This document shows, piece by piece, positions 23,745 through 53,966 of a stretch of DNA of 64,000 nucleotides; position 1 is the first letter of the stretch; every line of letters starts with the position of its first letter. Below the pieces are notes generated by a model. It was not told the DNA's origin, did not search any database, and saw nothing but the letters and a program-made list of their open reading frames with translations. Location: positions 1 to 64,000 of the IMG/VR virus record IMGVR_UViG_3300042549_005931. The stretch is one strand, 5' to 3'. Made by a program: the position numbers and the translations under genes.

Positions 23745-23749
23745 TTTTA

Positions 23750-24427: not shown

Positions 24428-24445
24428 AATAAATATTTTTTAATA

Positions 24446-33672: not shown

Positions 33673-33862
33673 TTATTGTTGGGTCTTTTGGTTTGGTGGT
33701 CTTGTGCCACTCCGATAAGTAATATTGGATTCTTTCACTCCATTCATTCTTATCAACTTCTTCAAACCAAACGGTTAACGCATCTAGTGAATTTGCTATC
33801 TTCTCTAATGCCTTTACTTTTCTTTGTTCAATTAATAATTGTTCTTTTTCTAATTCCGTCAT
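33665..33862 (-). CDS. Small hypothetical protein
   Basis: Coupled to neighbours; helical composition. Confidence 0.6.
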   Translation of the reverse strand: MTELEKEQLLIEQRKVKALEKIANSLDALTVWFEEVDKNEWSERIQYYLSEWHKTTKPKDPTING

Positions 33863-36157: not shown

Positions 36158-36197
36158 ACGAAACCGTTTTTTAATATTTCATTATAATATAAATACC

Positions 36198-36653
36198 TTA
36201 GACTTTTTTAACAAGTTCATTATCCATAATAGTCTCAATTGTTTCATAAACTGTTCTGTTTGTGGTGTCTATATCAATAAAATTATCTGTTGGTTCTTGA
36301 TAATTTTCAACATGAAATTGTTCTCTACCCCTAATATCTGAGGTGTGAACAAATATTTCAACTACATTTTCTTTTAATTCTTTTTTAAAATTATCCCTCA
36401 AATCTTTAAACGGTGACACTATTGACATGACAACATTTTTACCATCATTAAACGAAAGTTTTGCCATGTTTTGTGCAAGTTCAATATTTGTTCTTCTCCC
36501 ATTTTCAGAATAATCTTTGTTTTGTGTTAAATTACGCAAGTCGTCACCGTCAATGTGATGTACGTTTGTCAATTTATGTTCACACAGATATTTTGCTAAT
36601 GTTGTTTTACCGGCACCAGGTTGTCCAATAAAATAAAAAATCTTCTTACTCAT
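36198..36653 (-). CDS. cysC: Adenylyl-sulfate (APS) kinase, compact form
   Basis: GQPGAGKTT P-loop, IDGDDLR, YSENGRRTNI, SPFKDLR, YQEP. Confidence 0.85.
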   Translation of the reverse strand: MSKKIFYFIGQPGAGKTTLAKYLCEHKLTNVHHIDGDDLRNLTQNKDYSENGRRTNIELAQNMAKLSFNDGKNVVMSIVSPFKDLRDNFKKELKENVVEIFVHTSDIRGREQFHVENYQEPTDNFIDIDTTNRTVYETIETIMDNELVKKV

Positions 36654-38445: not shown

Positions 38446-39359
38446 TCTACGTCAAAGAAAAATAATTGGAAAAATCTTGAATTGTTTATTGTGTCACCAA
38501 AATAGTCGGAGGCTGAATGTATTGCTTTAGCATCCCAAATCACTAATCTATTATATACATTTGCAACGTTATCAACGGTTTCAAATTGTGTTTTATCATA
38601 GTAATTATAATCTTGACTAATTCCTCTGAATGTTTCTTCAACACCCTCTTCAAATGAATCTTCAAAACGTTTTTTACCTGTAACTTTACTACGATATGTT
38701 TTAGTACCGGTTTCTAATGGTGCATCGGGTGTTAGATAAACAACACCGGCATATTGTTGAACATCGGCGTGGATAACTATTGGGTCGTAAGATGTACAAT
38801 ATTGGAATATACCATTTGAATAATCCTCACTTTCCCAATTTGTTATTCTTCTCCCCATTATATTTTCTATCTTTTCTTTTGTTCCATCAACAAAAAATCT
38901 TTCCATACTTCTTTTACCTCTTGATGAGGATGTTGATTGAAAAGTTAGATTATTCATTGCGTAGTCTCTAATTAGGTCGGGATTTTTATAGAAATTATCA
39001 ACAACAATTAAATTCTTATGACCTTCACTAAATTCAGCACGAAACGCAATAAACTTATACACACTTTCAATTTCCATTGTTGTGTTATCCATCAATCTAA
39101 TTGTTAATGGTAAATCAATTTGTGATTGGTTTAATGTTATTTCAAAACCAATCTTATCGACATCACCAGCATGTGGGTATATCTCTTTCACATCTTTTCT
39201 TGTAAACCTATATGTGATTAAATCAACACCACCAATTTCAATTGATTTAATGTCTTGATTTGTGTGTAGCATCCATCCATTTAATATATATAACCCAAAA
39301 GAATGGGTTACACTATCAACATACCATAGAATTGCCGGTTGTTTTGAAATATGATTCAT
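38442..39359 (-). CDS. 2OG-Fe(II) oxygenase-like protein with an extra N-terminal domain
   Basis: VVDNFYKNPD, IHAD, AGVVYLTP, YNRLVI..IHSA, SRFFQLFFF. Confidence 0.75.
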   Translation of the reverse strand: MNHISKQPAILWYVDSVTHSFGLYILNGWMLHTNQDIKSIEIGGVDLITYRFTRKDVKEIYPHAGDVDKIGFEITLNQSQIDLPLTIRLMDNTTMEIESVYKFIAFRAEFSEGHKNLIVVDNFYKNPDLIRDYAMNNLTFQSTSSSRGKRSMERFFVDGTKEKIENIMGRRITNWESEDYSNGIFQYCTSYDPIVIHADVQQYAGVVYLTPDAPLETGTKTYRSKVTGKKRFEDSFEEGVEETFRGISQDYNYYDKTQFETVDNVANVYNRLVIWDAKAIHSASDYFGDTINNSRFFQLFFFDVE

Positions 39360-40950: not shown

Positions 40951-41535
40951 CTATCTAAATGTAGAACCGCCAACCCACAAGACTAAACTTTTACGAACGC
41001 CTTGGGTCACCGGTGTTATTCTATGTAACATATAACTTGGAAATAAAATTGCACATCCTTTATGTTTTTCTACGTTTTGGATACCTGCACCTGTCCACAA
41101 TTCTAACTCACCACCTTCATAATCCTCGGGATTCGATAGCTGAATGGTTATACTTACTTTTCTATGGTTAATAGGATGTGGACCAATGTCCATATGCCAT
41201 CCATAATGTCCACCATCATCATAATATTCGGTATATTGTATTGAGTCAACTATTGAATGTAAATCAAATTTCCAAACATTATTTGCTTCCAAAATAAACG
41301 ATTGTATTTTATCATATACCCAATGTGATTTATCATCAATATGAATCCATTTAACTTTTGATTTACGAACATTTTTTACTTCATCACCTCCTACAACGGT
41401 AGCTTCTTCATATGGATATAATTCTTTAAGATTATCTATCCATTCCAATTCTTGCTCAGAAAATCCTTCTTTAAAGCAATAGTAATTTGATTGGTCAATC
41501 GTTGAGTCTGTATTGAAAATTGGTTTAATTTGCAT
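40951..41535 (-). CDS. 2OG-Fe(II) oxygenase (PKHD/prolyl-hydroxylase-like)
   Basis: WHMD, RKVSITIQLS..YEGGEL, FPSYMLHRITPVT.G.RKSLVLW. Confidence 0.9.
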   Translation of the reverse strand: MQIKPIFNTDSTIDQSNYYCFKEGFSEQELEWIDNLKELYPYEEATVVGGDEVKNVRKSKVKWIHIDDKSHWVYDKIQSFILEANNVWKFDLHSIVDSIQYTEYYDDGGHYGWHMDIGPHPINHRKVSITIQLSNPEDYEGGELELWTGAGIQNVEKHKGCAILFPSYMLHRITPVTQGVRKSLVLWVGGSTFR

Positions 41536-42172
41536 GATTTATTAATTTTTTTACCACATCTTGAAACGTATCGGATTCTAATTGCATCACATGTTCATAA
41601 TCTTTACTTGTAACACTCAATTCACCAACTGCCTTAAAATTAGTTATGTTATATATTTTTCTTTTATGATAATCTTTATTCCACCAATATAATAAGTCAT
41701 CACCAAAAAATACTTTTAATCCTTTGTCGATAACAATGTAGTTTGATTTTTTGATTATCATCATACAACCAAAACCTAAACTTCTACACGGTGCTTCTTC
41801 AAAAATATAATCATCATTATCGTTATTGTGTTCTTCATAAAAGTTTGCATTTGCATCAAACCCAATAACACCAAAATCTAAATCATTGATTCTTGATAAG
41901 TTGTGATGTAAATTTTTAAAATTAAAACTTATATCATCATTCAATATACATAAAATTTCGTTAGTTGCATACTCAAAACCTAAATTCCACGCAGGATTTA
42001 CAAAAATGTTCTCATCTTGTTTGAATACTTTTATTTGTGGGTCATTAAATGATGAATCTGTGTTATCGATAACAATAAATTCTGAATTTGGAATGTTGGC
42101 TTCTTTAAATAATTCGATATTGTCCAATATCTTATCCGATTTCCACAAAGTTGGGGTTATAAATGTTATCAT
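41525..42172 (-). CDS. GT2-like glycosyltransferase
   Basis: VIDN, VNPAWNLG, ILNDD, FGC, FFGDD. Confidence 0.75.
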   Translation of the reverse strand: MITFITPTLWKSDKILDNIELFKEANIPNSEFIVIDNTDSSFNDPQIKVFKQDENIFVNPAWNLGFEYATNEILCILNDDISFNFKNLHHNLSRINDLDFGVIGFDANANFYEEHNNDNDDYIFEEAPCRSLGFGCMMIIKKSNYIVIDKGLKVFFGDDLLYWWNKDYHKRKIYNITNFKAVGELSVTSKDYEHVMQLESDTFQDVVKKLINHAN

Positions 42173-42229
42173 ATTATCTAATATATAAATTTTATTAATA
42201 ATAAGGTATATTATAACTTAATTATTGTG

Positions 42230-42736
42230 TTAAAAAAATGATTGAAGGGTGATACGTAAATTAGCGTCTAAATTAACTGTGGATACTGAATGGTGTACAC
42301 CACCTGTTTGAATTACACCTAAGTTTCTTTCGGGTTTAATGGCTCTAATTTCATTATTTAACTTATACATAAAATAACCACCCCAATCTGGGTCCCAATA
42401 ATCATTTAAGTATATAGTCAATGCAGATTCTACATGTGAATCATCGTGCCATGGTATATAACTTAATTTAGTCCAAATATATAACATTAATTGTTCAACA
42501 TTTAGTCCTGTTTTAGCATCTATTTCAGCCTTTAATTTGTTATGTAAAGGACTATTCTCATCTATGTCTATTATTAAAACCGGTGTAGTTTGGTTTCTTA
42601 TTTCATCTGGCCAACAGAAATTAGTTCTTCCCAAATATGGATTAGGACTTTTTATAGTTTTTTCCGCAAATGTTTGTACTTCATCAAACAAATCGTTTGA
42701 TAGGAATTCATCATATACTATTATGTTCTTATTCAT
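42230..42736 (-). CDS. 2OG-Fe(II) oxygenase
   Basis: WHDD, TIYLN..WGG, HSVS, RITLQ. Confidence 0.88.
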   Translation of the reverse strand: MNKNIIVYDEFLSNDLFDEVQTFAEKTIKSPNPYLGRTNFCWPDEIRNQTTPVLIIDIDENSPLHNKLKAEIDAKTGLNVEQLMLYIWTKLSYIPWHDDSHVESALTIYLNDYWDPDWGGYFMYKLNNEIRAIKPERNLGVIQTGGVHHSVSTVNLDANLRITLQSFF

Positions 42737-42739
42737 AAT

Positions 42740-43381
42740 TTATGGTTTAGGGGGGTGAAAAAGGAATGGTTTAGGGGTGACAAATAAAAATTTACTTATA
42801 GCATATCTACCATACCCAGAAAATGGTGTGTTGTTTTGTATCATTTTTATAGGATTTACTGAGTGTAGATTATGAGATGGGAATATTACTAATCTATTAT
42901 TTTTATATTCTATTTCTGTTCTTTCATCACCCAACATTAAATTACCACCTTCAAATGATTGTGGAGTTTTATTACACCAATATATACAGGATAAAATGGC
43001 TTGGTCCTTGTGAGGTTTATAATAATCACTATCTTGATAGTAACTAATAAATGTTCGGTCATGTCCCACAAATTTAAAATATTTAAATTCATTGGGTAAA
43101 TCGTCTATAATATCGGATACTTCCTCATTATATATTTTTTCAAAATTATTTAATATGGTTGATGTTTCTCTTTTTTGGTATAAATCATCTAAAAATAAAA
43201 CATTATTTTTCTTTAATGGTATTTTTGTTTCGAGGTCTATTGCACCATTAGATTTTTCAGGAGGTAACATAATTTCCTCTTTAGTTAAAAAATCTAACTC
43301 TAACCAATTCTTTTTTAATTCGTCATCATTAAAAAAATCATCAATAATTAAATAATTGTAAGAACTACTTGTAACTTTCAT
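42740..43381 (-). CDS. 2OG-Fe(II) oxygenase
   Basis: PHKD, FEGGNL, NNRLVIFPS..HSV, GRYAI. Confidence 0.88.
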   Translation of the reverse strand: MKVTSSSYNYLIIDDFFNDDELKKNWLELDFLTKEEIMLPPEKSNGAIDLETKIPLKKNNVLFLDDLYQKRETSTILNNFEKIYNEEVSDIIDDLPNEFKYFKFVGHDRTFISYYQDSDYYKPHKDQAILSCIYWCNKTPQSFEGGNLMLGDERTEIEYKNNRLVIFPSHNLHSVNPIKMIQNNTPFSGYGRYAISKFLFVTPKPFLFHPPKP

Positions 43382-43386
43382 TTTAT

Positions 43387-43950
43387 TTATTTTTTATAAC
43401 AATACCATCCGGTTAGTATGTATTTTGTTTCTGTATTTGAAATAACTCCTCTATGGGTGTGAGTAAAATCGGCTGGCCATATTAGTAATTTACCCACTTC
43501 CGCCTTTTCAATGTGATTTTGATATAAAAACTCGGTACCGCCATCTTTAACATCATTTAAATAAATCATCCACACTAATAATCTATCGATATATTCCTTA
43601 TCTCCATTTCTTTCACAATGCCACCCATAAAATCCTTCTCCTGGTTCGTATTTTTGAAGATTGAATGTTGATAATGAAAATGGATTCATGTGTTTTAAAG
43701 CAGAATACTTTTCTACATATTCGTCTATTCCAATGTTTACTGATTTGACTAATTCATCAAATAAATCATACCATTCAATATAATTTTTTTCACTTTCTAA
43801 TATACCCGGATAAAATAAAATTTCACTCGCTCTTTTAAAGTCTTCAGGTAATTCAGATGATTGTTTTAAATCAGAATGTTCAAATGTGGTGATAAATTCT
43901 TCACATATCTCTTTAGATAAAACATTAGGTTTAGAATATATAAAATCCAT
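43387..43950 (-). CDS. 2OG-Fe(II) oxygenase (HxE type)
   Basis: QKYEPGEGFYGWHCE, YLNDV..GGTEF, WPA.FTHTHRG, KYILTGW. Confidence 0.88.
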   Translation of the reverse strand: MDFIYSKPNVLSKEICEEFITTFEHSDLKQSSELPEDFKRASEILFYPGILESEKNYIEWYDLFDELVKSVNIGIDEYVEKYSALKHMNPFSLSTFNLQKYEPGEGFYGWHCERNGDKEYIDRLLVWMIYLNDVKDGGTEFLYQNHIEKAEVGKLLIWPADFTHTHRGVISNTETKYILTGWYCYKK

Positions 43951-43951
43951 A

Positions 43952-44539
43952 TTATACTTTTAAAGAGTACCAACCCGTTATAATATATTTAGTTTTAGTG
44001 TTACTTATTTGTCCTCGATGATAGTGAGTCCAATCTGTTGGCCATATAAGTAACTTACCAGTTTCCGCCTTTTCAGTATGGTTTTGATACATAAATTCTG
44101 TACCCCCATCATCTAAATCATTTAAATAAACCATAAAAACTAACATTCTAGGTAATGTGGAGACATGTGCTCTCTCACAGTGCCATTGATGAAACCCTTC
44201 ACTAGGTTTGTATTTCTGTATATTATACCCATCTAAAACAAATTTAGACATGTTTTCTAAAGGTTCATAACGTTCAACATAATTATCAATTTCGAATTGT
44301 AATTTGTTTTGAAATTTATTAACTAAACTACCCCATTCTTTTTTATTTTCTTCCTTATCCAAAAAATTGGGCCAAAATGTAACGTCAGTAGACTGTTTTA
44401 TATAATCTACTTCTACAGCTTCACCATATTTTCCGGCAATACATCCTCTAGCACGTAATGGTGATGACTCAAATTTATTGATTAAATCCGCACACATTTC
44501 AGAAGATAAAAAATTGTTTTTTCTATATATAAAATCCAT
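43952..44539 (-). CDS. 2OG-Fe(II) oxygenase (HxE type), paralogue of 43387..43950
   Basis: QKYKPSEGFHQWHCE, YLND..GGTEF, THYHRG, KYIITGW. Confidence 0.88.
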   Translation of the reverse strand: MDFIYRKNNFLSSEMCADLINKFESSPLRARGCIAGKYGEAVEVDYIKQSTDVTFWPNFLDKEENKKEWGSLVNKFQNKLQFEIDNYVERYEPLENMSKFVLDGYNIQKYKPSEGFHQWHCERAHVSTLPRMLVFMVYLNDLDDGGTEFMYQNHTEKAETGKLLIWPTDWTHYHRGQISNTKTKYIITGWYSLKV

Positions 44540-44540
44540 A

Positions 44541-45128
44541 TTATTTAAAAACAGTACCTCCTACCCACAATACTAAACTTTTACGAATACCCTTTGTTAC
44601 TGGTGTTACCCTATGTAAAATATAACTAGGAAATAACACCGCACACCCTTTTTCTTTAGGCATCTTACTTACTTTATTTCCCATCATCAACTCTAAATCA
44701 CCACCCTCATATTCATCGGGGTCAGATAATTGAACTGTTATACTAATTTTTCTTGTATTATAAGGATGTGGTCCAGTATCTACGTGCCAATCATAATGAC
44801 CACCATTTTCGTAGTATTGTGTGTATTGTACTGTATCTAAAATTGATGGTATATCGAATTGCCACATTTCTTTATTGGCCATCATAACAATATTGGATAA
44901 ACGACTATACACCCAATCTGTCTTTTCATCATGGGTTAACCATTTTACATCTGATTTTCGCATCGTATTCTCATCTTCAAACGCACCTGTGGATGCTTTT
45001 TGTATATCGTATAATTTTTGTAAATTATTTAACCATCCTAATTCTTCTTCGGAAAACGAATCGTAATAAGGATAAAACCCCATTGGGTTACTTTGACTAT
45101 GAACGGGAAATACCGGTTTTAAATCCAT
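44541..45128 (-). CDS. 2OG-Fe(II) oxygenase (PKHD-like), paralogue of 40951..41535
   Basis: WHVD, RKISITVQLS..YEGGDL, HRVTPVTKGIRKSLVLW; ATG at 45128 aligns with the paralogue's start. Confidence 0.9.
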   Translation of the reverse strand: MDLKPVFPVHSQSNPMGFYPYYDSFSEEELGWLNNLQKLYDIQKASTGAFEDENTMRKSDVKWLTHDEKTDWVYSRLSNIVMMANKEMWQFDIPSILDTVQYTQYYENGGHYDWHVDTGPHPYNTRKISITVQLSDPDEYEGGDLELMMGNKVSKMPKEKGCAVLFPSYILHRVTPVTKGIRKSLVLWVGGTVFK

Positions 45129-45138
45129 AACTTTTTTT

Positions 45139-45681
45139 TTATAATTCAAACGAAAAACCATATGACAAATTAATTCTTAATTTATCACCTTTAACTACTT
45201 CTGAAGAATGTTCCACTATACCAGCATCACACCTCCATAACATTTTTTCTTCAACTGGAAGTAATTCACCACCATATATTGGTTTACCTCCACCATCGGG
45301 AAACGAAATTAATAAATTATATCTAACAGTATAATATTCACGAAAACTATCATCAATGTGTGGTTCAACATATGAGTCTTCCCCAACAATCCCTATCCAA
45401 TCATAATTTACAGGTGCGTGTAAGGGATTTGTAATGTTTTCTAAATCTAATATTTTATTTCTTATTGCATAAAATATATTTGGTTTTTCATCATTGGGAT
45501 ATAATATTCTAAAATGACGTTTTAATCCTGATTTATATTGGTCTTTTTCTGAATTTACGGGTTGGGAAAAACTCATACCTGTTTGTTCGGATAATACCCA
45601 ATCTCTTAACTCCGATTGTTCATCATCATTAATAAAATCTCTATAACCATAGGTTCCGCCAAAATATACTTTTTCAAACAT
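45139..45681 (-). CDS. 2OG-Fe(II) oxygenase-like protein
   Basis: PHID, YNLLISFPDGGG, EHSS, RINLSYGF. Confidence 0.7.
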   Translation of the reverse strand: MFEKVYFGGTYGYRDFINDDEQSELRDWVLSEQTGMSFSQPVNSEKDQYKSGLKRHFRILYPNDEKPNIFYAIRNKILDLENITNPLHAPVNYDWIGIVGEDSYVEPHIDDSFREYYTVRYNLLISFPDGGGKPIYGGELLPVEEKMLWRCDAGIVEHSSEVVKGDKLRINLSYGFSFEL

Positions 45682-45687
45682 AATTTA

Positions 45688-47310
45688 TTATTTCAAATAT
45701 ATTAAAAAATCTGCGTGGTCTTGTAATATTTTTAAATTTAATAACATATTTCTTTTAAATTTCTCATCGAAAGTAAAAAAATGTTCTCTACGAACGTCAC
45801 TATTAGTGGCTCCATAAAGTTCAAACGCTCTTTCTCTATTAAATAAATGTAACCCATTAGTTATCGCATAAAAACTAGATACATCATACGCGTCATTAAT
45901 TGTTTTTATAAATTTACGTTCCGGCATAGTAATAGAACATTGTTCTAAGTATTTTTCTATGTTTTCTGTAATTTTATTTTTATCTCTAAATGTTTTCCAA
46001 AATTCAGAATCACTACGTTTTGTTAAATAATGTAGGTAAATAAAATCTTTAGTATCATCGTGAAATTTGTTCACTCTCTCATTATATCTATTAATATAAA
46101 ACTCATTGTTTGAAATAGCACCTAAATTATTGGAGATATACTCATTTAATGATGTAGTGATTGTCCAAATTGATGTTGCTTCTAACGGTTCGATAAAACC
46201 GGAAGACAAACCAATAGCTATACAGTTTTTAATCCACGTTTGTTTGTATCGTCCGGCATCATATGTAAATGGATTACCAAATTCGATATCGTTTCCAAAT
46301 CGTTCTTTGATTTCTTCCTTTGCTTGTTCATCTGAAATAAAATCTGAATCAAACACATAACCACAACCAAATCTACCTTCAACCGGTATCTTCCACATCC
46401 ATCCATATTTTAAAGCAATTGATTCTGTATATGGTGGTACATCATTACTTTCATTAGGGATTACAAATGGGATTGCTCGTTTCATTGGTAAACTATCTGA
46501 ATATGATTCCCATTCACCCTTAAAATGTTTACCGATAATTAATCTATTGAACCCACTACAATCAAACACAAAATTACAAGGTAATTTATCACCCCGTTTA
46601 GTTGTAATTTCTTTTATAGAACCATCATTTTCATTACTTATAATTTCATTGAGTTCGGATTCAACATACCTAACTCCACGGTACATAGCATTCTTTTTTA
46701 AAAACTTGGCCAATAATCTAGCGTCAAAATGCATACCAAAACTAGATAATGAATTAAAATGTGTAATTGGGTTTTGGTCTTTATTATCTATATTTACAGA
46801 TGGAATAAAGTTAACTAAATTTCTTTTTGATGCATTAGCACTAAATGAAATATCATCCAATGATTCTCCTTTAGCAATTGAATTTAAAACTAAAGTAGAA
46901 ATCCCACCACCATTTGTTGCATCATTAGTTTCGAATGAATTTACATTTGTGTTTTCAAAAAATGGGTGAAAATATGACGTATCATCACCATTCCAATCGG
47001 TAAATTTAATACCACTTTTGATTGTTCCTTTCGCATATTTTACAATATCTGAAACGGAAATTCCTACACTGTCCATAAAATGAACAAAATGTGGTGTTGT
47101 TCCTTCACCAGCACCTAAAATACCAATTTCAGCACTTGCCAATACGGTAATATTAATCCATGGATAGTTTTTCTTTAAAAATAAAGCAGTCATCCATCCG
47201 GCAGTTCCACCACCTACAATGACAAAATTGAATTTATTTTCTATAACCTTGTCTAACGATTGGTCCATAGGGCCAATAGGACCGATTGGTCCAATTTGTT
47301 CTTCTTCCAT
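45688..47310 (-). CDS. Flavin-dependent halogenase (tryptophan-halogenase family)
   Basis: GGGTAGW, GAGEGT, TIKSGIKF (catalytic Lys position), DCSGF, GWMWKIP, FIEPLEATSI. Confidence 0.9.
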   Translation of the reverse strand: MEEEQIGPIGPIGPMDQSLDKVIENKFNFVIVGGGTAGWMTALFLKKNYPWINITVLASAEIGILGAGEGTTPHFVHFMDSVGISVSDIVKYAKGTIKSGIKFTDWNGDDTSYFHPFFENTNVNSFETNDATNGGGISTLVLNSIAKGESLDDISFSANASKRNLVNFIPSVNIDNKDQNPITHFNSLSSFGMHFDARLLAKFLKKNAMYRGVRYVESELNEIISNENDGSIKEITTKRGDKLPCNFVFDCSGFNRLIIGKHFKGEWESYSDSLPMKRAIPFVIPNESNDVPPYTESIALKYGWMWKIPVEGRFGCGYVFDSDFISDEQAKEEIKERFGNDIEFGNPFTYDAGRYKQTWIKNCIAIGLSSGFIEPLEATSIWTITTSLNEYISNNLGAISNNEFYINRYNERVNKFHDDTKDFIYLHYLTKRSDSEFWKTFRDKNKITENIEKYLEQCSITMPERKFIKTINDAYDVSSFYAITNGLHLFNRERAFELYGATNSDVRREHFFTFDEKFKRNMLLNLKILQDHADFLIYLK

Positions 47311-47326
47311 AATTTTATTTTATTTT

Positions 47327-47860
47327 TTAATTGTTTTCTTGATTATTTTCTTGTTCCAACTGTTGTTTGTATTTTCTATCTAATTCGGTCAAAATTTCGG
47401 GATTATTTTCAACATCTAATATTGTGATTGATGGTGGTGTTTCTTGTAAAACCCATTTGAGTTCGGATTCGTTCCAAATATAAACATAATTATCGGATTC
47501 TAATCCTTCAGGTAATTCTGTTGGCATTGGAACTGGTGGTTTCCATGTAAATGTATCGGGGTCCAATATAAATGATGCGTACGAAACAGGTTTGGCACCA
47601 TAAAAAGCGTCTGCCACCGGGTCATAATATCCACCTATTTTTGCGTAATTTTTTCTAAACGCGGGTTTACCACTTGGAACAAACGTGCCATAGTGATAAT
47701 GAGTACCAGCTCTTGTGTTACACGATGTTTGAATCCACGTTCCCCCTAATCCACAGTCTTCAGCTAAATATTCTTGTCCTCTGTGTTCTTGTTCATCAGG
47801 TACAACTAGTACATTTAATACCTGATTTGTTTCTTCGTCAATTTCTGCAAAATGTGCCAT
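47327..47860 (-). CDS. Phage protein of the type found next to Gly-rich fibre genes
   Basis: MAHFAEID..V..V.VV, WIQTS.NT, FRKNYA.IG..YD...DAF, W.PPVPMP. Confidence 0.7.
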   Translation of the reverse strand: MAHFAEIDEETNQVLNVLVVPDEQEHRGQEYLAEDCGLGGTWIQTSCNTRAGTHYHYGTFVPSGKPAFRKNYAKIGGYYDPVADAFYGAKPVSYASFILDPDTFTWKPPVPMPTELPEGLESDNYVYIWNESELKWVLQETPPSITILDVENNPEILTELDRKYKQQLEQENNQENN

Positions 47861-47864
47861 AATA

Positions 47865-48860
47865 TTATCCTGCGTAAGTTGTAAAGTTAGTTGTTTGATT
47901 TACTTCATGATAGAAATAACCATCCCCACCATTCCATCCACTTCCAGCGTTAAGTCTTTGTGGATTTGGATATCTAAGTCGGATTTGTCCGTTACCTCCT
48001 TTTGACCCATATGCGTAAGTCGAACTGGTTGTTGGGGTTGGGAATCCCCACGCTACGGCCTGTCCTCCACCTCCACCACCGGCACCTTCAGAATCGGCAC
48101 CTTGAGTAGAGAATTGACGACAACATGGGTCACGTCCGTCACCACCTCTACCTCCACCATTTTCACCACCATTAGCACCAGGGTCACCAGACCACGTTCC
48201 ACCACCTCCACCGGCACCATAGGTTCTACCTAAAGCGTTCGCACCATTACCTCCTTTTGTTGGTAATCCCCAACTATTAGTTTGACCAGCTTGACCCATT
48301 CCTCCCCCAGAACCACCAAAGAAATAAAATGCGGTAGTACCACCGTATCCTTGGTTACCGGAACCTCCTGGCATTTCATTATTCGGTGCCCCTGACCCAC
48401 CACCACCACAACCTCCGGGTTGTCCTGAATTGCAAGGGCTAGAATCCGCATTAAGTCCTGAAACACGGCTACCACCGCCTCCTCCACCTTGTCCTGTGTA
48501 TCCTAAAGCATTTGAGTTTCCACCTTGTCCACCATTTCCACCATAATCACTATCACCCGCACCACCACCACCTACGGTAAATGTGTAGTTAACGTTACGA
48601 TACATAGTTACGTTTGTTTGGCCAATCATACCGCCTCCGCCGCCGCCTCCACCATTATAGTATCCACCGCCACCACCTCCACCGACCATAGCCACTTGAG
48701 ATGTCCAATAAAATTGGTATCCATAAAATTCACTGAAAGAATCGGGAGTTCCTTTTCCCGCTGTTGAGCTTAAAGAACGTAATGAATATGAACCATTTAT
48801 TGCAGACAATTCATTACGAATTTGAGATAAGCTGATTGCACCTGAACCTTGTAATGTCAT
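47865..48860 (-). CDS. Glycine-rich putative tail-fibre adhesin
   Basis: N-terminal MTLQGSGAISLSQIRNEL, many polyGly runs, GGNGQIRLRY. Confidence 0.7.
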   Translation of the reverse strand: MTLQGSGAISLSQIRNELSAINGSYSLRSLSSTAGKGTPDSFSEFYGYQFYWTSQVAMVGGGGGGGYYNGGGGGGGGMIGQTNVTMYRNVNYTFTVGGGGAGDSDYGGNGGQGGNSNALGYTGQGGGGGGSRVSGLNADSSPCNSGQPGGCGGGGSGAPNNEMPGGSGNQGYGGTTAFYFFGGSGGGMGQAGQTNSWGLPTKGGNGANALGRTYGAGGGGGTWSGDPGANGGENGGGRGGDGRDPCCRQFSTQGADSEGAGGGGGGQAVAWGFPTPTTSSTYAYGSKGGNGQIRLRYPNPQRLNAGSGWNGGDGYFYHEVNQTTNFTTYAG

Positions 48861-48887
48861 AATTAAAAATTGTTATATAAATCTACA

Positions 48888-48895
48888 TATAAATA
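48888..48895 (-). promoter_or_regulatory. TATTTATA motif upstream of the Gly-rich gene
   Basis: TATAAATA on + strand, 27 nt from ATG 48860. Confidence 0.45.
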
Positions 48896-48909
48896 CAAAG
48901 TTAATAAAA

Positions 48910-50445
48910 TTATTGAACATTTTTTATCATCTCAATTAATTTTTTATTATCTATTGATGTTTTCATTGCTTGTTCTACGTTATATCTATATGTTTCCATC
49001 CACATCGAAAAATCACCATCTAATAGGTACGTTTCATTTTCTTTTTTAAATGTTTCTTTTGGTATTAAAGTTTCACAAAGCCCAACACCGACCTCAATAT
49101 AACTAATAATTGGGAATGTATCAACTTTATTTCTATCAAAAATGTTGGGTGTACGTTCTTTCCATGTTTTTAATTTTTTTTCTAATGTTTTAGGTATGAT
49201 TGTACGTTCTTTATACTCTTTCCAAAATGGAGTATCATTTCTTTCAGTTAAATAATGGTAATATAAAAAATCTAAAACACTATCATTAAAATTGTTGAAA
49301 TACTCATTATATTCTTCTCTAAATAAATCAGAGGGATGTGTAAAGTTCATTTTGGTAAGATATGTTAATTGAGATATGGCAATCCATATTGATGTGGCCT
49401 CAATTGGTTCTGTAAATCCCGCACTTAAACCAACAGATATACAATTTTTAACCCACACATCTTTAAATCTACCCGCATTAAAATCAATTACTTTATTAAT
49501 CTTAATTTCTTTACCAACCATTTCTTCCACTTCTTTCTTAGCTTCATCTACACTGATATAATTTTTATCAAAAATATAACCGCAACCATATCTACTTTGT
49601 AAAGGTATTTTCCACATCCAACCATATTTCATGGCAATTGCATCTGTATGTGGTTGTATAATGTCATCTTCTTTATCTAAAAAGAATGGTATCGCACAAT
49701 TGACTTTAAGTTGATTCTCATATGAAATCCACTCACTTTCATAATGCTTACCTATAATTAATCTTTTAAACCCACTACAATCAAAAACAAAATCAATATT
49801 AGATACTGTTATATCCTCAGTTAAGTTGATTGAACATATATTTCCGTTTTTATCATTTTGAATATCTTTTACAGTACCTTCAATTCTTTTTATACCTCTT
49901 TCTTCAGCCTTTTTTCTTAAAAATTTTGCCATTAAAGAAGCATCAAAATGATATGAATAACTTACAACTTTTTTAAATGTGTCATCGATATATAGATAAG
50001 GAGATTTATTATTATATGATAATAAATGAGTGATTAATGTGTTATCTAAATTTTCGTCGTTTGCAATTAAATTTGTAATGGTATAATTTGTTGCGTTAGG
50101 TGTTAAACCAACTGAAATAACATTTCCAGATTTAACAATCTCTTCAAAATTTAATGATTTATCTTCCACACTGAAACCATGCATATATTTTGTACCATCA
50201 CCTCTCCAATTTTCAAAATTAATTCCTAATTTAAATGTGGCATCCGTTTCTTTAATTATTTCTTCTTCACTTATACCCAAGTTATATAGAAAATATGGGA
50301 ATATCGGTACAGAACCTTCACCAGCACCCAAAATACCTATTTCCTCACTTTCAATAAGTGTGATATTATAATCAGGTGCAATTTTGTTTAAATAAAGAGC
50401 GGTTAACCAACCTGCAGTACCACCACCTACTATTACTAATTTCAT
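48910..50445 (-). CDS. Flavin-dependent halogenase (tryptophan-halogenase family)
   Basis: GGGTAGW, GAGEGS, TFKLGINF (catalytic Lys position), DCSGF, GWMWKIP, FTEPIEATSI. Confidence 0.9.
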   Translation of the reverse strand: MKLVIVGGGTAGWLTALYLNKIAPDYNITLIESEEIGILGAGEGSVPIFPYFLYNLGISEEEIIKETDATFKLGINFENWRGDGTKYMHGFSVEDKSLNFEEIVKSGNVISVGLTPNATNYTITNLIANDENLDNTLITHLLSYNNKSPYLYIDDTFKKVVSYSYHFDASLMAKFLRKKAEERGIKRIEGTVKDIQNDKNGNICSINLTEDITVSNIDFVFDCSGFKRLIIGKHYESEWISYENQLKVNCAIPFFLDKEDDIIQPHTDAIAMKYGWMWKIPLQSRYGCGYIFDKNYISVDEAKKEVEEMVGKEIKINKVIDFNAGRFKDVWVKNCISVGLSAGFTEPIEATSIWIAISQLTYLTKMNFTHPSDLFREEYNEYFNNFNDSVLDFLYYHYLTERNDTPFWKEYKERTIIPKTLEKKLKTWKERTPNIFDRNKVDTFPIISYIEVGVGLCETLIPKETFKKENETYLLDGDFSMWMETYRYNVEQAMKTSIDNKKLIEMIKNVQ

Positions 50446-50482: not shown

Positions 50483-50836
50483 TTAAATGGAAGGGGTGTT
50501 AGGTGTTGTTGCAGTGGCCCACGGTAATGGTAAATTATATTTACCAATTAATTGTGATTCACTATCTATATTATTTTGTATTTGGGTTTTAAATTCTTCA
50601 ACATTAAGATTATTTTCCAACCATAATATGATAGTTTCTCGAGTTATCCCTGAATAATTAATAAATGTTCCACTATTTGGTGATGGTAAATCTAATTTAC
50701 CCGAAATAAATAAGTCAACACCATCTTCTCTTGTACCTCTATACACATATGTTATTGCACTAATTACATCATTTAAACCATCTAATGATTTTTTTGGATG
50801 TAAATTCATAATTTCCCATTGATATACCATTTCCAT
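50483..50836 (-). CDS. Putative tail-fibre-associated protein
   Basis: Follows the fibre gene; YQWEI..DVI..I.Y, FINYSGIT..II.W, LPLPW. Confidence 0.55.
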   Translation of the reverse strand: MEMVYQWEIMNLHPKKSLDGLNDVISAITYVYRGTREDGVDLFISGKLDLPSPNSGTFINYSGITRETIILWLENNLNVEEFKTQIQNNIDSESQLIGKYNLPLPWATATTPNTPSI

Positions 50837-50837
50837 A

Positions 50838-53800
50838 TTAATCTAAACCTACGTGTTTTTTAATTTTATTTACTTCTTCGGTTAATTCTTTAATTGCCTC
50901 AATTAACAATGGTACAATTTTATCATATTTTACCGTTAAATAGTTTTCACCTGATTTTGATTCCGTTTTCCCATCATCCGTTGTTCCAAAGTCAAACGGC
51001 GCCAAAGTGACAACTTCAGGTAGTACAGATTGTATTTCTTGTGCCGAAACTCCGACTTGTAATTTAGAATCGTTATAACCAAAACTTTTGGCCAAATCAT
51101 TATTAACATAATAGAAACCATTTAATTTGGATACTTTATCCAATGGATTTTCTATCGGTCCTAAATTTTCTTTTAATCTTTCATCTGAATAATACGCAGT
51201 AATATCACTTGTTGCAGCAATTTGATTGGGAACATAAAACGCTTTACCATTATAAACCCTAACCCACGTATTATCTTCCATAAAGATACCACCACCATAT
51301 GTTCCACTAAACCATCCCGAACTACCTTGACTTCTAAACCAGTTTGGTGTATAAACCGTATCAAATGTTGGACCATTGTTGGTATTAACATATTGGTTCA
51401 TGGCAGACGCATAAACGTTTGATGTACCTGAAGGACCTGTTGGCCCTTGAGGACCTGTGTTACCATTAGTACCATTAGTACCTGAAGGTCCTTGTCTACC
51501 TTGTGGACCTACGGGACCTATTGGACCTATCGGTCCTTGTGGACCTGCTCCACCAACGTTACCTGTTGGACCTGTATTTCCTTGATTACCCTGTGGACCA
51601 GCTGGCCCTGTGTTACCTATATTACCCTGTGGACCTACGGGACCTATTGGACCTTGTGGTCCCGTATTTCCATTATTACCCGCAGGTCCTGTATTTCCTT
51701 GATTACCTTGAGGACCAATGTTACCTTGTGGTCCCGTATTTCCATTATTACCCGCAGGTCCTGTATTTCCTTGATTACCTTGTGGCCCGATGTTACCATT
51801 GTTACCAGCAGGTCCCGTATTTCCTTGGTTACCTTGGGGTCCTATGTTACCATTTGTTCCGTTATTACCTGAAGGACCTTGTCTACCTTGCGGACCTACG
51901 GGTCCAATTGGTCCTATATTACCTTGTGGACCTATGTTACCCTGAGGTCCAATTGGTCCAGTGTTTCCTTGATTTCCTTGAGGTCCTGTAGCACCATTGT
52001 TACCATTGTTACCTGCAGGTCCTGTGTTACCTTGATTACCTTGAGGGCCTGTTGGTCCTGTGTTACCCTGATTACCCTGAGCACCATTATTACCATTATT
52101 ACCTGAAGGACCTTGTCTACCTTGAGGGCCTACGGGACCAATTTGGCCAGTATTTCCTTGATTACCCTGTGGACCAGTTGGACCTGTATTTCCTTGGTTA
52201 CCTTGAGCACCGTTGTTACCATTATTACCTGATGGTCCTTGTCTACCTTGAGGGCCTACGGGACCAATTGGGCCAGTATTTCCTTGATTACCTTGAGGAC
52301 CGGTTGGACCTGTATTTCCCTGATTACCTTGTGGGCCAGTTGCACCCGTATTTCCTTGATTACCCTGTGGGCCAGTTGCACCCGTATTTCCTTGATTACC
52401 CTGTGGGCCAGTTGCACCCGTATTTCCTTGATTACCCTGTGGACCTGTAGCACCCGTATTTCCTTGGTTACCTTGGGGTCCTGTTGGTCCTGTATTTCCT
52501 TGGTTACCTTGAGCACCGTTGTTACCATTATTACCTGATGGTCCTTGTCTACCTTGTGGACCGACAGGTCCGATTGGGCCAGTATTTCCCTGATTACCTT
52601 GTGGACCTGTCGGTCCTGTATTTCCTTGGTTACCTTGAGGACCTGTTGGTCCAACATTACCTTGAGAACCCACGTTACCCTGAGCACCAGTATTTCCTTG
52701 ATTTCCTTGTGGACCTAAGTTACCAAATGCACCTTGATTTCCTTGCGGACCTGTTAGTCCTGTATTTCCTTGGTTACCCTGAGGACCTGTTGGTCCGACA
52801 TTACCTTGCGGACCTGTGGCTCCTTGATTACCTTGTGTACCCACATTACCTTGAGGACCAAGATTACCAAACGCACCTTGATTTCCTTGCGGGCCTGTTG
52901 GTCCTGTATTTCCTTGGTTACCCTGAGGACCAGTTGGTCCAACATTACCTTGAGGCCCACTATTTCCTTGATTACCTTGCGGTCCTGATGGACCTGTGTT
53001 TCCTATTGGACCTGTGTTACCCTGATTACCTTGAGGACCTGTTGGTCCTGTGTTACCCTGATTACCTTGTGGACCAGTTGGTCCTGTGTTTCCTTGATTT
53101 CCTTGTGGTCCTATAACACCCTGAGGGCCCGTTGGTCCTTGTGGTCCTGATACATTTGAAGAACCACCAGCAGGACCGGTAGCTCCTTGATTACCTTGAA
53201 AACCTTGAGGACCGGTTGGTCCTGTACCACCTTGATTTCCTTGAAAACCTTGAGGACCAACATTACCATTTAAACCATTATTACCTGCAGGTCCTGTGTT
53301 TCCTTGGTTACCTTGAGGACCGGTTGGTCCTGTTACACCTGTGTTACCCTGATTTCCTTGTGGACCAGTTGGTCCCACGTTACCTTGGGGACCAGTAGCA
53401 CCTTGATTGCCTTGAGTTCCCGCAGGTCCTGTGTTACCTTGATTACCCTGAGGTCCGGTTAAACCAGTATTACCTTGATTACCTTGTGGACCAGTTGGTC
53501 CAACATTACCTTGTGGGCCGACATTTCCTTGATTTCCTTGTGGTCCTGTTAAACCAGTATTTCCTTGATTACCTTGAGCACCTGTTGCACCCACATTACC
53601 CTGATTACCTTGTGGGCCTGTTGGTCCCACGTTACCTTGGGGTCCTGTTGGTCCTTGTGGACCACCCACTAATAAATTTGTGGCAACACCTGCAGCAGTT
53701 TCAGTTAAATCAATATACGCACCTCGAGCGGAACCTCCTTGTTCAAAAATTCTTATTTTATTTTGGTAAGAGTCGATTGTTATACCACTACCTGTAAGTG

Positions 53801-53966
53801 TGGTATTTGTCTCAGGTTTACCTAATAATAATTCTCCACCTTCGTCACCCCCAATTGCGTCTAGTGTTAATTTTCCACCAGCACCACCACCAACCGATAA
53901 AGAACCGGTAATTACAGAATTATTTTTAGCAATGACACCATTGCGTGCCACAAATTCATTTGCCAT
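50838..53966 (-). CDS. Collagen-like fibre protein with C-terminal intramolecular chaperone (peptidase S74)
   Basis: About 250 G-X-Y triplets; WFRSQG..W....YGGGIFM.D.TWVR head motif; YSDERLKEN..GVSAQE..PEVV..YDKIVPLLIEAIKEL. Confidence 0.92.
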   Translation of the reverse strand: MANEFVARNGVIAKNNSVITGSLSVGGGAGGKLTLDAIGGDEGGELLLGKPETNTTLTGSGITIDSYQNKIRIFEQGGSARGAYIDLTETAAGVATNLLVGGPQGPTGPQGNVGPTGPQGNQGNVGATGAQGNQGNTGLTGPQGNQGNVGPQGNVGPTGPQGNQGNTGLTGPQGNQGNTGPAGTQGNQGATGPQGNVGPTGPQGNQGNTGVTGPTGPQGNQGNTGPAGNNGLNGNVGPQGFQGNQGGTGPTGPQGFQGNQGATGPAGGSSNVSGPQGPTGPQGVIGPQGNQGNTGPTGPQGNQGNTGPTGPQGNQGNTGPIGNTGPSGPQGNQGNSGPQGNVGPTGPQGNQGNTGPTGPQGNQGAFGNLGPQGNVGTQGNQGATGPQGNVGPTGPQGNQGNTGLTGPQGNQGAFGNLGPQGNQGNTGAQGNVGSQGNVGPTGPQGNQGNTGPTGPQGNQGNTGPIGPVGPQGRQGPSGNNGNNGAQGNQGNTGPTGPQGNQGNTGATGPQGNQGNTGATGPQGNQGNTGATGPQGNQGNTGATGPQGNQGNTGPTGPQGNQGNTGPIGPVGPQGRQGPSGNNGNNGAQGNQGNTGPTGPQGNQGNTGQIGPVGPQGRQGPSGNNGNNGAQGNQGNTGPTGPQGNQGNTGPAGNNGNNGATGPQGNQGNTGPIGPQGNIGPQGNIGPIGPVGPQGRQGPSGNNGTNGNIGPQGNQGNTGPAGNNGNIGPQGNQGNTGPAGNNGNTGPQGNIGPQGNQGNTGPAGNNGNTGPQGPIGPVGPQGNIGNTGPAGPQGNQGNTGPTGNVGGAGPQGPIGPIGPVGPQGRQGPSGTNGTNGNTGPQGPTGPSGTSNVYASAMNQYVNTNNGPTFDTVYTPNWFRSQGSSGWFSGTYGGGIFMEDNTWVRVYNGKAFYVPNQIAATSDITAYYSDERLKENLGPIENPLDKVSKLNGFYYVNNDLAKSFGYNDSKLQVGVSAQEIQSVLPEVVTLAPFDFGTTDDGKTESKSGENYLTVKYDKIVPLLIEAIKELTEEVNKIKKHVGLD
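51424..53664 (-). repeat. Collagen G-X-Y coding repeat (dominant 36-bp unit encoding GPQGNQGNTGPT/GAT)
   Basis: 9/36-bp periodicity with synonymous variation; one interruption (GGSSNVS) near 53150-53170. Confidence 0.95.

What the first reader, a model, noticed from the sequence alone, without database searches (positions are those of the whole stretch)
45688..50445. Two flavin-dependent halogenases bracketing a Gly-rich adhesin gene pair, next to the collagen fibre
Both keep GxGxxG, the PrnA-type catalytic Lys position and WxWxIP, so they look like real halogenases. Viral members of the family are known (cyanophage VirX1), but their natural substrates are not. Here they flank a Trp/Tyr-containing Gly-rich protein within the fibre module, which suggests halogenation of virion proteins rather than free tryptophan (inference). 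No flavin reductase gene was seen in the window.
Basis: partly seen in the sequence, partly recalled or inferred. Interest (0 to 1): 0.6.

Follow-up and report, generated by a model that had tools for sequence, protein, structure and literature searches.

The report
Phage halogenases inside a tail-fibre module
A large marine phage carries two intact flavin-dependent halogenase genes on either side of a glycine-rich tail-fibre gene and its chaperone; the same pairing recurs in many other phages, including the genome that encodes the studied enzyme VirX1, so the fibre is a testable candidate for the unknown natural target of viral halogenases.

Summary
Genes at 45688-47310 and 48910-50445 (minus strand) are full-length flavin-dependent halogenases. 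They score Pfam Trp_halogenase at 1e-104 and 4e-112, are 40% identical to each other, and keep GxGxxG, WxWxIP, the catalytic Lys and the partner Glu.

The two genes between them are not an adhesin pair. They are a tail fibre (Pfam Gly_rich_2; the fold model matches cyanophage Pam3 fibre gp24) and a likely chaperone (best fold match Pam3 gp25). A collagen-like fibre lies upstream. About seven or eight 2OG-Fe(II) oxygenase genes and a roughly 20-kb glycosyl, sulfate and carbamoyl modification island lie downstream. No flavin reductase was found in the 269-kb record.

Gly-rich or collagen-like fibre genes are about 5 times denser within 2.5 kb of a halogenase than 5-10 kb away. The same order (Gly_rich_2 fibres, small gene, two halogenases, 2OG oxygenases) occurs at the VirX1 locus of Syn10, in S-RIM44 and in P-TIM40. 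Parallel arrangements occur in S-SRM01 and an actinophage.

The linkage is not universal. A large clade pairs the halogenase with a small membrane protein, an APS kinase and a sulfotransferase instead.

Halogenation of virion proteins is therefore plausible and testable, but unproven.

The parts
45688..47310 (-). halA, flavin-dependent halogenase, 540 aa, with a conserved N-terminal extension of about 25 aa (EEQIGPIGP...)
   Evidence: Pfam PF04820 1.3e-104. Motifs G33xGxxG, K98, W304xW306xI308P309 and E374/E377. The N-terminal extension is conserved in L082-L085.
47327..47860 (-). p177, probable tail-fibre chaperone (PHROG 7759)
   Evidence: PHROG 7759 1.2e-28. AF2 model pLDDT 80. Best of 48,161 PDB chains is 7ypx_a, the Pam3 chaperone gp25: Z 5.5, next best 3.3. 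Homologues always lie just downstream of a Gly-rich fibre gene, also in podophages without halogenase.
47865..48860 (-). Gly_rich_2 tail-fibre protein, 331 aa, 31% Gly
   Evidence: Pfam PF21722 3.3e-13. The model's core matches the Pam3 fibre 7ypx_A (Z 11.6, 195 residues, 29% identity) and the Bxb1 tail tip 9d93_Qa (Z 10.7); the ALK glycine-rich domain scores Z 5. Model confidence is low overall (pLDDT 54).
48910..50445 (-). halB, flavin-dependent halogenase, 511 aa
   Evidence: Pfam PF04820 3.9e-112. Best solved relative Th-Hal 5lv9, 9e-73; VirX1 6qgm, 1.5e-55, aligned over residues 3-492. 40% identical to halA.
50483..50836 (-). DUF7936 protein, 117 aa, between the collagen fibre and halB
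   Evidence: Pfam PF25590 1.8e-13. Kept in L002, L003 and L084 at the same place.
50838..53966 (-). collagen-like tail fibre with a C-terminal Peptidase_S74 intramolecular chaperone domain, 1042 aa
   Evidence: Pfam Collagen 4e-109 and Peptidase_S74 2.7e-12; many tail-fibre PHROGs. G-X-Y triplets with Pro and Asn in the X position.
45139..45681 (-). p180, conserved gene directly downstream of halA; possibly a divergent 2OG-Fe(II) oxygenase
   Evidence: Kept after halA in L082-L085. An HxD...H...R pattern is visible in the translation. The profile comparison with the neighbouring oxygenases is weak (E 0.01, probability 4%), so this is inconclusive.
40951..45161 (-). array of six P4H-type 2OG-Fe(II) oxygenase genes (a seventh hit, 42230-42736, is below the Pfam cut-off) interrupted by a GT2 glycosyltransferase gene (41525-42172)
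   Evidence: Pfam 2OG-FeII_Oxy_3 for 40951-41535, 42740-43381, 43387-43950, 43952-44539 and 44541-45161; weak for 42230-42736. Glycos_transf_2 for 41525-42172.
22074..39359 (-). adjoining modification island: carbamoyltransferase, UDP-glucose dehydrogenase-like, radical-SAM-like, two GT7-LamG fusions, GT2s, methyltransferase, APS kinase, DUF6445
   Evidence: PHROG and Pfam scans.

Best explanation
Shown: two paralogous, apparently active flavin-dependent halogenases sit in one tightly packed, same-strand gene block of a T4-like marine myovirus. The order along the direction of transcription is: collagen-like fibre, DUF7936, halB, Gly_rich_2 fibre (Pam3 gp24-like), fibre chaperone (Pam3 gp25-like), halA, then seven or eight 2OG-Fe(II) oxygenases. 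Inferred: the block is transcribed together with the fibre genes. The halogenases would take FADH2 from a host flavin reductase, form hypohalous acid at the flavin, pass it to the conserved Lys/Glu pair, and halogenate an electron-rich aromatic side chain (Trp or Tyr). The most likely target is the Gly_rich_2 fibre, or another fibre protein, while it is being folded. In this reading the halogenases belong to a wider suite of enzymes that tailor virion surface proteins (hydroxylation, glycosylation, perhaps sulfation). The substrate assignment is the weak step.
For: Enzyme identity and intact catalytic motifs. The Lys, Trp, Pro and Glu positions are invariant in 52 non-redundant viral homologues, which implies purifying selection. 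The middle pair is a fibre plus a chaperone: and PMC9608196. Intergenic gaps are 4-49 nt and no intergenic terminator-like site lies on the coding strand. Both halogenases lie within 1.6 kb of the only two Gly-rich ORFs in 269 kb. Synteny is kept in six relatives down to 48% halogenase identity. The same order is found at the VirX1 locus of Syn10, in S-RIM44 and in P-TIM40. In S-SRM01 the halogenase lies between the tail fibre and the 'adhesin tip' gene. In actinophage DSL-LC01 it follows a protein annotated as ALK (taken here as a glycine-rich-domain giant; not scanned) and two collagen genes. L028, L102, L105, L108, L112/L125, L113 and L135 all have Pfam Gly_rich_2 genes beside the halogenase. 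Fibre-like ORF density is 0.99 per 10 kb within 2.5 kb of a halogenase and 0.17-0.21 at 5-10 kb (48 lineages). Fibre-adjacent halogenases are spread over at least five subfamilies of the tree. HMMER alignments to tryptophan halogenases stop near residue 434, while VirX1 aligns to residue 492. VirX1 has a large open site and no known natural substrate (PMC8407142). Flavin-dependent halogenases can act on peptides and even a folded protein: MibH, SrpI, ChlH (bioRxiv 10.1101/2025.01.12.632611).
Against: There is no direct evidence for any substrate. No Trp is invariant in the Gly-rich protein alignment; only Gly, S116 and Y297 are. The fibre-chaperone module works without halogenases in many phages. 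About half of the lineages with adequate flanks (15 of 29) have no fibre-like gene within 5 kb. These include P-SSM2, S-PM2 and S-SSM7 and the largest clade, where the conserved partners are a 94-aa membrane protein, an APS kinase, DUF2061, a sulfotransferase and a nuclease. The ends of tail-fibre modules are known places where accessory genes accumulate, so adjacency may reflect insertion sites. Lineages are not independent. The Gly-rich model is low confidence (pLDDT 54). Halogenated virion proteins have never been reported: of the papers found by four full-text searches, the seven I read or term-searched report none; a marine-phage virion PTM proteomics paper contains no term beginning 'halogen', 'bromin' or 'chlorin'.
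Confidence: 0.4

Rival explanations
1. Small-molecule auxiliary enzyme. The halogenases act on free indole, tryptophan or another host metabolite during infection, which is the classic 'prnA' reading. Their position beside fibre genes only reflects where accessory genes accumulate in T4-like genomes.
For: The best solved relatives are tryptophan 5-, 6- and 7-halogenases (E 1e-62 to 1e-73). VirX1 halogenates many small aromatics in vitro (PMC8407142). The literature treats prnA as an acquired bacterial metabolic gene (PMC2984593, PMC3037559). In HTVC008M the gene lies between terS and terL. In S-SSM7, P-SSM2 and S-PM2 no Gly-rich gene is near. The largest clade has non-structural neighbours.
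Against: The C-terminal substrate module of the tryptophan-specific enzymes is not alignable. No other small-molecule pathway genes are found beside them. The distance-dependent enrichment is specific to Gly_rich_2 and collagen-type genes, also in an unrelated actinophage. Two or three divergent paralogues per phage are kept next to fibre genes.
Confidence: 0.3
2. Host-surface or receptor remodelling. The halogenases work with the glycosyltransferases, sulfotransferase/APS kinase, carbamoyltransferase and oxygenases on a host envelope component, for example to block superinfection or to stop progeny sticking to debris. They stay linked to receptor-binding fibre genes because the two co-adapt.
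For: The window has a roughly 20-kb sugar, sulfate and carbamoyl island next to the halogenases. APS kinase or sulfotransferase genes recur beside halogenases in other clades. A small Trp-rich membrane protein overlaps the halogenase stop codon in the loci checked (for example L006, L013) and lies within three genes of it in 59 of 85 loci. S-SSM7 has its halogenase inside a heptose and carbamoyltransferase island.
Against: Flavin-dependent halogenases need an electron-rich aromatic or enol substrate, which ordinary envelope glycans lack. No transporter or lipid-carrier genes were seen. This is pure inference.
Confidence: 0.15
3. Relics with no halogenating role: the proteins are inactive or have a different oxidative function.
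For: The FxxPxxSxG motif of VirX1-type enzymes reads FxEPxEATS here (Ser to Ala, Gly to Ser). No flavin reductase is encoded.
Against: The FAD motif, WxWxIP, Lys and Glu are all intact and invariant across 52 homologues. Both reading frames are full length. Paralogues only 40% identical are both retained. The EATS variant is shared by a whole clade including HTVC008M and P-SSM2. From general knowledge: host flavin reductases normally suffice for these enzymes.
Confidence: 0.05

Closest known systems
VirX1 and its tandem partner in cyanophage Syn10/Syn9 (PDB 6QGM)
   Same: Viral flavin-dependent halogenase of the same Pfam family, alignable over nearly the full length (residues 3-492). The catalytic Lys and Glu are shared. 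There are two halogenase genes per phage. The gene order is the same: Gly_rich_2 fibre genes, small gene, halogenases, 2OG oxygenases, PHROG 1644.
   Different: Only about 30% identical. The Syn10 pair forms a separate clade, so the duplications are independent. In Syn10 the two genes are tandem, whereas here they flank the fibre-chaperone pair. VirX1 has FIEPLESTG, the window enzymes FxEPxEATS. Halide preference is untested here.
'prnA' tryptophan-halogenase genes of T4-like cyanomyoviruses and pelagiphage HTVC008M
   Same: HTVC008M is the nearest cultured relative (45% identity). The halogenase is associated with arrays of 2OG-Fe(II) oxygenases near the structural module. The natural function is unknown (PMC2984593).
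   Different: In HTVC008M the halogenase lies between terS and terL, 8 kb from its Gly-rich/p177 pair. The window phage is larger (at least 269 kb), has two copies, and carries no psbA.
Pam3 tail fibre gp24 with chaperone gp25 (PDB 7YPX; PMC9608196)
   Same: The Gly-rich protein and p177 each have their best structural match in the two chains of this one complex. The gene order, fibre then chaperone, is the same. p177 has a beta-rich N-terminal part and a C-terminal helix like gp25.
   Different: Pam3 is not among the halogenase hits in the phage collection, though only 60 of the 82 matching records were listed. The chaperone match is weak (Z 5.5, 58 residues). The fibre model is low confidence.
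Peptide- and protein-modifying flavin-dependent halogenases MibH, SrpI, ChlH
   Same: Same enzyme family (MibH 5uao matched at 9e-45). They show that ribosomally made peptides, and in one case a folded protein, can be substrates (bioRxiv 10.1101/2025.01.12.632611).
   Different: Those enzymes sit in RiPP clusters with a precursor peptide and often their own reductase. No such genes were seen here.

Membership tests
Flavin-dependent halogenase (Pfam PF04820, PrnA/RebH/VirX1 type) | Full-length match to the family profile above the curated cut-off | tested here: met
   351 and 376 bits against a cut-off of 21, covering profile positions 1-446 of 458.
Flavin-dependent halogenase (Pfam PF04820, PrnA/RebH/VirX1 type) | GxGxxG FAD-binding motif and WxWxIP motif | tested here: met
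   GGGTAG and GWMWKIP in both proteins. These columns are conserved in 52 viral homologues.
Flavin-dependent halogenase (Pfam PF04820, PrnA/RebH/VirX1 type) | Catalytic Lys (PrnA/VirX1 K79) and partner Glu (PrnA E346) | tested here: met
   halA K98 and halB K72 align with VirX1 K75, which is K79 in the +4 PDB numbering. halA E374/E377 and halB E346/E349 lie in EPxE. Calling them catalytic rests on published work on the family.
Flavin-dependent halogenase (Pfam PF04820, PrnA/RebH/VirX1 type) | FADH2-, O2- and halide-dependent halogenating activity | not testable with these tools
   Needs an enzyme assay.
Tryptophan halogenase in the strict sense (free L-Trp as substrate) | C-terminal module that binds the amino-acid part of tryptophan | tested here: inconclusive
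   HMMER alignments to Th-Hal, RebH, PrnA, Thal and PyrH end at about residue 417-435 of 511. Only VirX1 and Xcc4156-type chains align to about residue 492. Individual binding residues could not be checked because no reference sequences were available to align.
VirX1-type motif FxxPxxSxG | Ser and Gly of the motif present | tested here: not met
   The window enzymes read F-x-E-P-x-E-A-T-S, while VirX1 reads F-I-E-P-L-E-S-T-G.
Pam3 gp24-like Gly_rich_2 tail fibre with gp25-like chaperone | Glycine-rich domain (PF21722) and fold like the solved fibre | tested here: met
   PF21722 at 50.6 bits against a cut-off of 24.3. 7ypx_A Z 11.6 and 9d93_Qa Z 10.7, well above the next matches at Z 5. Caveat: model pLDDT is 54.
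Pam3 gp24-like Gly_rich_2 tail fibre with gp25-like chaperone | Dedicated chaperone gene directly downstream with a gp25-like fold | tested here: inconclusive
   The top match is the gp25 chain 7ypx_a, but at Z 5.5 over 58 residues. The gene order and the two-part architecture agree.
Pam3 gp24-like Gly_rich_2 tail fibre with gp25-like chaperone | Protein present in the virion and binding the host receptor | not testable with these tools
   Needs virion proteomics and adsorption assays.
RiPP-type peptide halogenase system | Precursor peptide with leader and RiPP maturation enzymes in the neighbourhood | tested here: not met
   The neighbours are fibre genes, 2OG oxygenases and glycosyltransferases. 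No RiPP family appeared in the Pfam scans of 40-56 kb.

The most novel reading that the evidence does not exclude
Viral flavin-dependent halogenases, including VirX1, are enzymes that post-translationally halogenate Trp or Tyr residues of Gly_rich_2 or collagen-type tail-fibre proteins. They would act alongside phage-encoded hydroxylases, glycosyltransferases and sulfotransferases, so that marine phage virions carry halogenated receptor-binding proteins. That would be a virion modification never described before, and it would supply the missing natural substrate of cyanophage 'prnA'.
Probability: 0.3. Interest if true: 0.9.

Novelty: new member of a known kind. Interest (0 to 1): 0.6.

Why it matters
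Halogenase ('prnA') genes have been catalogued in marine T4-like phages since 2005, and one of them, VirX1, is a studied biocatalyst. Their natural substrate and their benefit to the phage are still unknown. This analysis shows that the genes are preferentially embedded next to one particular class of tail-fibre gene, in many lineages and at the VirX1 locus itself. That turns an open question into a concrete experiment on phages that are already in culture: look for Cl, Br or I on fibre peptides. If confirmed, it would add halogenation to the known modifications of virions, with consequences for host recognition and particle stability in halide-rich seawater. It would also give enzymologists a natural protein substrate for this enzyme class.

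Tried and rejected
No result either way.
2. T4-type late promoter TATAAATA: 11 matches against 19 expected by chance, none informative. The sigma-70-like scan was at background (85 against 78.5).
3. megablast of the region against the phage collection found nothing. tblastn of the Gly-rich protein found nothing, probably because of low-complexity filtering.
4. The genome search with PF21722 missed the gene that hmmscan finds, so I did not use it for counting.
I therefore did the reciprocal survey by tblastn of p177.
6. Scan of bacterial genomes for halB relatives: only two MAG contigs, probably phage-derived, so there was no bacterial outgroup and the tree is midpoint-rooted only.
7. I considered whether halA and halB are orthologues of the Syn10 pair and rejected it: the Syn10 and S-RIM44 copies form their own clade.
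8. I considered whether p180 is a flavin reductase and rejected it: no reductase family hit, and it shows an HxD...H...R pattern instead. The profile comparison with the 2OG oxygenases was itself too weak to confirm that reading.
9. The VirX1 paper (PMC6875430) is not held, so I could not check whether its authors discussed the gene neighbourhood.
10. The sequencing-read tools were not used. No alternative genetic code was needed.


Full report
**What is there**

The window is the first 64 kb of a 269,133-bp linear IMG/VR virus record that CheckV estimates to be 81% complete. From about 19 kb to 64 kb nearly every gene is on the minus strand.

In the finding's region the minus-strand ORFs, listed in the direction of transcription, are:
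- a 1042-aa collagen-repeat protein with a C-terminal Peptidase_S74 chaperone domain (50838-53966);
- a DUF7936 protein (50483-50836);
- halB (48910-50445, 511 aa);
- a 331-aa protein with 31% Gly (47865-48860);
- a 177-aa protein, p177 (47327-47860);
- halA (45688-47310, 540 aa);
- a 180-aa protein, p180 (45139-45681);
- an array of P4H-type 2OG-Fe(II) oxygenases with one GT2 gene, down to 40951.

Intergenic gaps are 4-49 nt, and no terminator-like site lies between genes on the coding strand. Co-transcription is likely, but that is an inference.

**The halogenases**

Both proteins match Pfam Trp_halogenase end to end (1.3e-104 and 3.9e-112) and PHROG 2928. They are 40% identical to each other and are the only two copies in the record.

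Their best solved relatives are tryptophan 5-, 6- and 7-halogenases (Th-Hal 5lv9, 9e-73). Those alignments stop near residue 434. VirX1 (6qgm, 1.5e-55) aligns over residues 3-492.

Both proteins carry GxGxxG and WxWxIP, as read from the translations. In an alignment of 52 non-redundant viral homologues, four positions are invariant: the Lys (halA K98, halB K72), the first Trp, the Pro, and the first Glu of EPxE. That Lys shares a column with VirX1 K75, which is K79 in the tagged PDB numbering and is named as the guiding lysine in PMC8407142.

One difference from VirX1: the FxxPxxSxG motif reads FxEPxEATS here, as it does in HTVC008M, P-SSM2 and S-H38.

No flavin reductase family (PF01613, PF03358, PF00175) is present in the 269 kb. 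From general knowledge of this enzyme class, diffusible FADH2 from host reductases normally suffices.

**The gene pair in the middle**

The Gly-rich protein matches Pfam Gly_rich_2 (3.3e-13). Its AlphaFold model is poor overall (pLDDT 54), though the core is at 70-85. Against 48,161 PDB representatives that core finds:
- the cyanophage Pam3 fibre (7ypx_A, Z 11.6, 195 residues, 29% identity);
- a mycobacteriophage Bxb1 tail-tip chain (Z 10.7);
- the ALK glycine-rich domain, well below, at Z 5.

The p177 model is better (pLDDT 80). Its best match is the other chain of the same entry, 7ypx_a: Z 5.5, with the next match at 3.3. PMC9608196 describes that entry as fibre gp24 (helical N-terminus, then TNF-like and glycine-rich receptor-binding domains) embraced by chaperone gp25 (beta-sandwich plus C-terminal helix). 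p177 shares that two-part layout.

p177 homologues (PHROG 7759) occur in 35 phage records. These include small podophages of Pelagibacter and Roseobacter and a Pontimonas phage, and the gene lies in the tail-fibre region. In HTVC025P (G 21%) and Melnitz-2 (G 26%) the gene directly upstream is Gly-rich; in phiPsal1 it is not.

So the 'adhesin pair' is best read as a receptor-binding fibre plus its chaperone.

**Synteny survey**

*Close relatives.* L002, L003 and L082-L085 keep the order collagen fibre, (DUF7936), (halB), Gly-rich fibre, p177, halA, p180 (in L082-L085), 2OG oxygenases. halB is absent from four of them. L003 has three halogenases.

*More distant phages with the same order.* In Syn10, the source of VirX1, the order is a Gly-rich 316-aa gene, a 168-aa gene, two Pfam Gly_rich_2 genes, a 164-aa gene, halogenase 1, VirX1, then 2OG oxygenases and a PHROG 1644 gene. 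S-RIM44 and P-TIM40 are built the same way, directly downstream of a giant tail fibre.

*Parallel arrangements.*
- S-SRM01 has its halogenase between a tail-fibre gene and a gene annotated 'gp37-gp38 adhesin tip complex'.
- Actinophage DSL-LC01, which is not a member of Kyanoviridae, has a giant protein annotated as ALK (taken here as a glycine-rich-domain protein; not scanned), two collagen genes, a 456-aa gene, a halogenase and a glycosyltransferase.
- L006-L008 and L024 resemble DSL-LC01.
- L028, L102, L105, L108, L112/L125, L113 and L135 have Pfam-confirmed Gly_rich_2 genes beside their halogenases.

*Numbers.* I surveyed 150 halogenase loci grouped into 48 lineages (under 60% halogenase identity), one representative each.

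| Distance from halogenase | Gly-rich or collagen-like ORFs per 10 kb |
|---|---|
| 0-2.5 kb | 0.99 |
| 2.5-5 kb | 0.44 |
| 5-7.5 kb | 0.21 |
| 7.5-10 kb | 0.17 |

The window's own genome has 2 such ORFs in 269 kb. Fourteen of the 29 lineages with at least 4 kb of flank on both sides have such an ORF within 5 kb. On a maximum-likelihood tree, fibre-adjacent halogenases fall in at least five subfamilies. halA and halB lie in different subclades, and the Syn10 and S-RIM44 pairs form a clade of their own.

*Counter-evidence.*
- The largest clade (58 loci) pairs the halogenase with a 94-aa Trp-rich membrane protein whose start overlaps the halogenase stop. Its other neighbours are an SNase-type nuclease, an APS kinase, DUF2061, a galactose-3-O-sulfotransferase-like gene and an endolysin. 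It has no convincing fibre gene: 5 of its 58 loci have a composition-flagged ORF within 5 kb, the nearest 2.7 kb away, mostly short opposite-strand ORFs.
- P-SSM2, S-PM2 and S-SSM7 have no Gly-rich gene within 7-10 kb.
- In HTVC008M the fibre-chaperone pair is 8 kb from the halogenase.
- Across the Gly-rich family no Trp is conserved; only Gly, S116 and Y297 are invariant.

**Wider neighbourhood**

The region from 20 to 45 kb is a modification island. It contains:
- a carbamoyltransferase;
- a UDP-glucose dehydrogenase-like gene;
- a radical-SAM-like gene;
- two GT7-Laminin_G fusions and several GT2 genes;
- a methyltransferase and an APS kinase;
- a DUF6445 gene and the 2OG oxygenase array.

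Upstream, from 54 to 64 kb, are ConA-like lectin (Laminin_G_3) proteins, a 1369-aa protein and a 723-aa tail-fibre protein. The halogenases therefore sit exactly at the junction between the fibre genes and the tailoring enzymes. No psbA was found. The nearest cultured relative of the halogenases is pelagiphage HTVC008M, at 45% identity.

**Interpretation**

Shown: the enzymes are bona fide, conserved family members. They flank a fibre-chaperone pair. This kind of pairing recurs far beyond the window's own lineage.

Inferred: they halogenate a fibre protein. I rank the readings as follows:
- 0.4: halogenation of a fibre protein.
- 0.3: the classic small-molecule reading.
- 0.15: host-envelope or receptor remodelling.
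- 0.05: inactivity.

The main confounders are shared ancestry between lineages and the known tendency of accessory genes to collect at the ends of fibre modules.

**Literature**

Cyanophage prnA is long known and has no assigned function (PMC2984593, PMC3037559, PMC10452541). VirX1 is characterised only on non-natural substrates (PMC8407142). Peptide and protein halogenation by this enzyme family has precedent in MibH, SrpI and ChlH (bioRxiv 10.1101/2025.01.12.632611). None of the held papers I read or term-searched mentions fibre linkage or halogenated virions. The VirX1 paper itself was not available.

**Housekeeping**

Noticed in passing
window 20155-21663 (-), especially 20155-20304: A 502-aa protein with no Pfam or PHROG hit ends in a tail of about 50 aa rich in Cys, Gly and Tyr (...CFCGGYYNDPCSECNNATCGKGFRC...GGYNGYCTGGC).
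   Followed up: partly
window 47236-47310 (N-terminus of halA); collagen fibre around residues 811-818: halA and its orthologues in L082-L085 have a conserved N-terminal extension, EEQIGPIGP(IGP), ahead of the FAD-binding fold. The string GPIGPIGP also occurs in the neighbouring collagen-like fibre. No explanation.
   Followed up: partly
L013:11533-11817 and 58 other loci; L083:6735-7073; window 41525-42172: A 94-112-aa Trp-rich membrane protein lies within three genes of the halogenase in 59 of 85 loci; its start overlaps the halogenase stop in the loci checked (for example L006, L013). The window genome lacks it. In close relatives it sits where the window has a GT2 gene.
   Followed up: partly
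L028:9992-12034; L048:6789-7475; L044:5388-6047; L004:4610-5290: One halogenase (680 aa) carries a C-terminal extension of about 230 aa that clustered, by BLAST single linkage, with stand-alone 190-230-aa ORFs next to halogenases in other phages. The extension has no Pfam hit. This could point to a functional partner.
   Followed up: partly
window 36198-36653; L013:7828-9743; L048:7472-8227: APS kinase and sulfotransferase genes recur next to viral halogenases in several clades, and an APS kinase is in the window's island. This hints at coupled sulfation and halogenation.
   Followed up: partly
window 30881-32251 and 32248-33672 (-): Two adjacent genes fuse a GT7 (beta-1,4-galactosyltransferase-like) domain to a Laminin_G_3 / ConA-like lectin domain, which is unusual for a phage.
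   Followed up: no
window 50838-53966 (-): The collagen-like fibre has more than 200 G-X-Y triplets, with Pro and Asn almost only in the X position (GPQ, GPT, GNQ, GNT). About seven P4H-type oxygenase genes lie nearby, yet Pro is not in the Y position that animal prolyl 4-hydroxylases use.
   Followed up: partly
L099 (Actinomycetia phage DSL-LC01) 1-9621: An unrelated actinophage has a giant protein annotated as ALK (taken as glycine-rich-domain; not scanned), two collagen genes, a Tyr-rich 456-aa protein (40 Tyr), a halogenase and a glycosyltransferase in a row. This parallels the window.
   Followed up: partly
whole record G000: the genome search with PF21722 reported no match in the window's own genome, although hmmscan finds the domain at 47865-48860. 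Low-complexity families are missed by that tool's first pass.
   Followed up: yes
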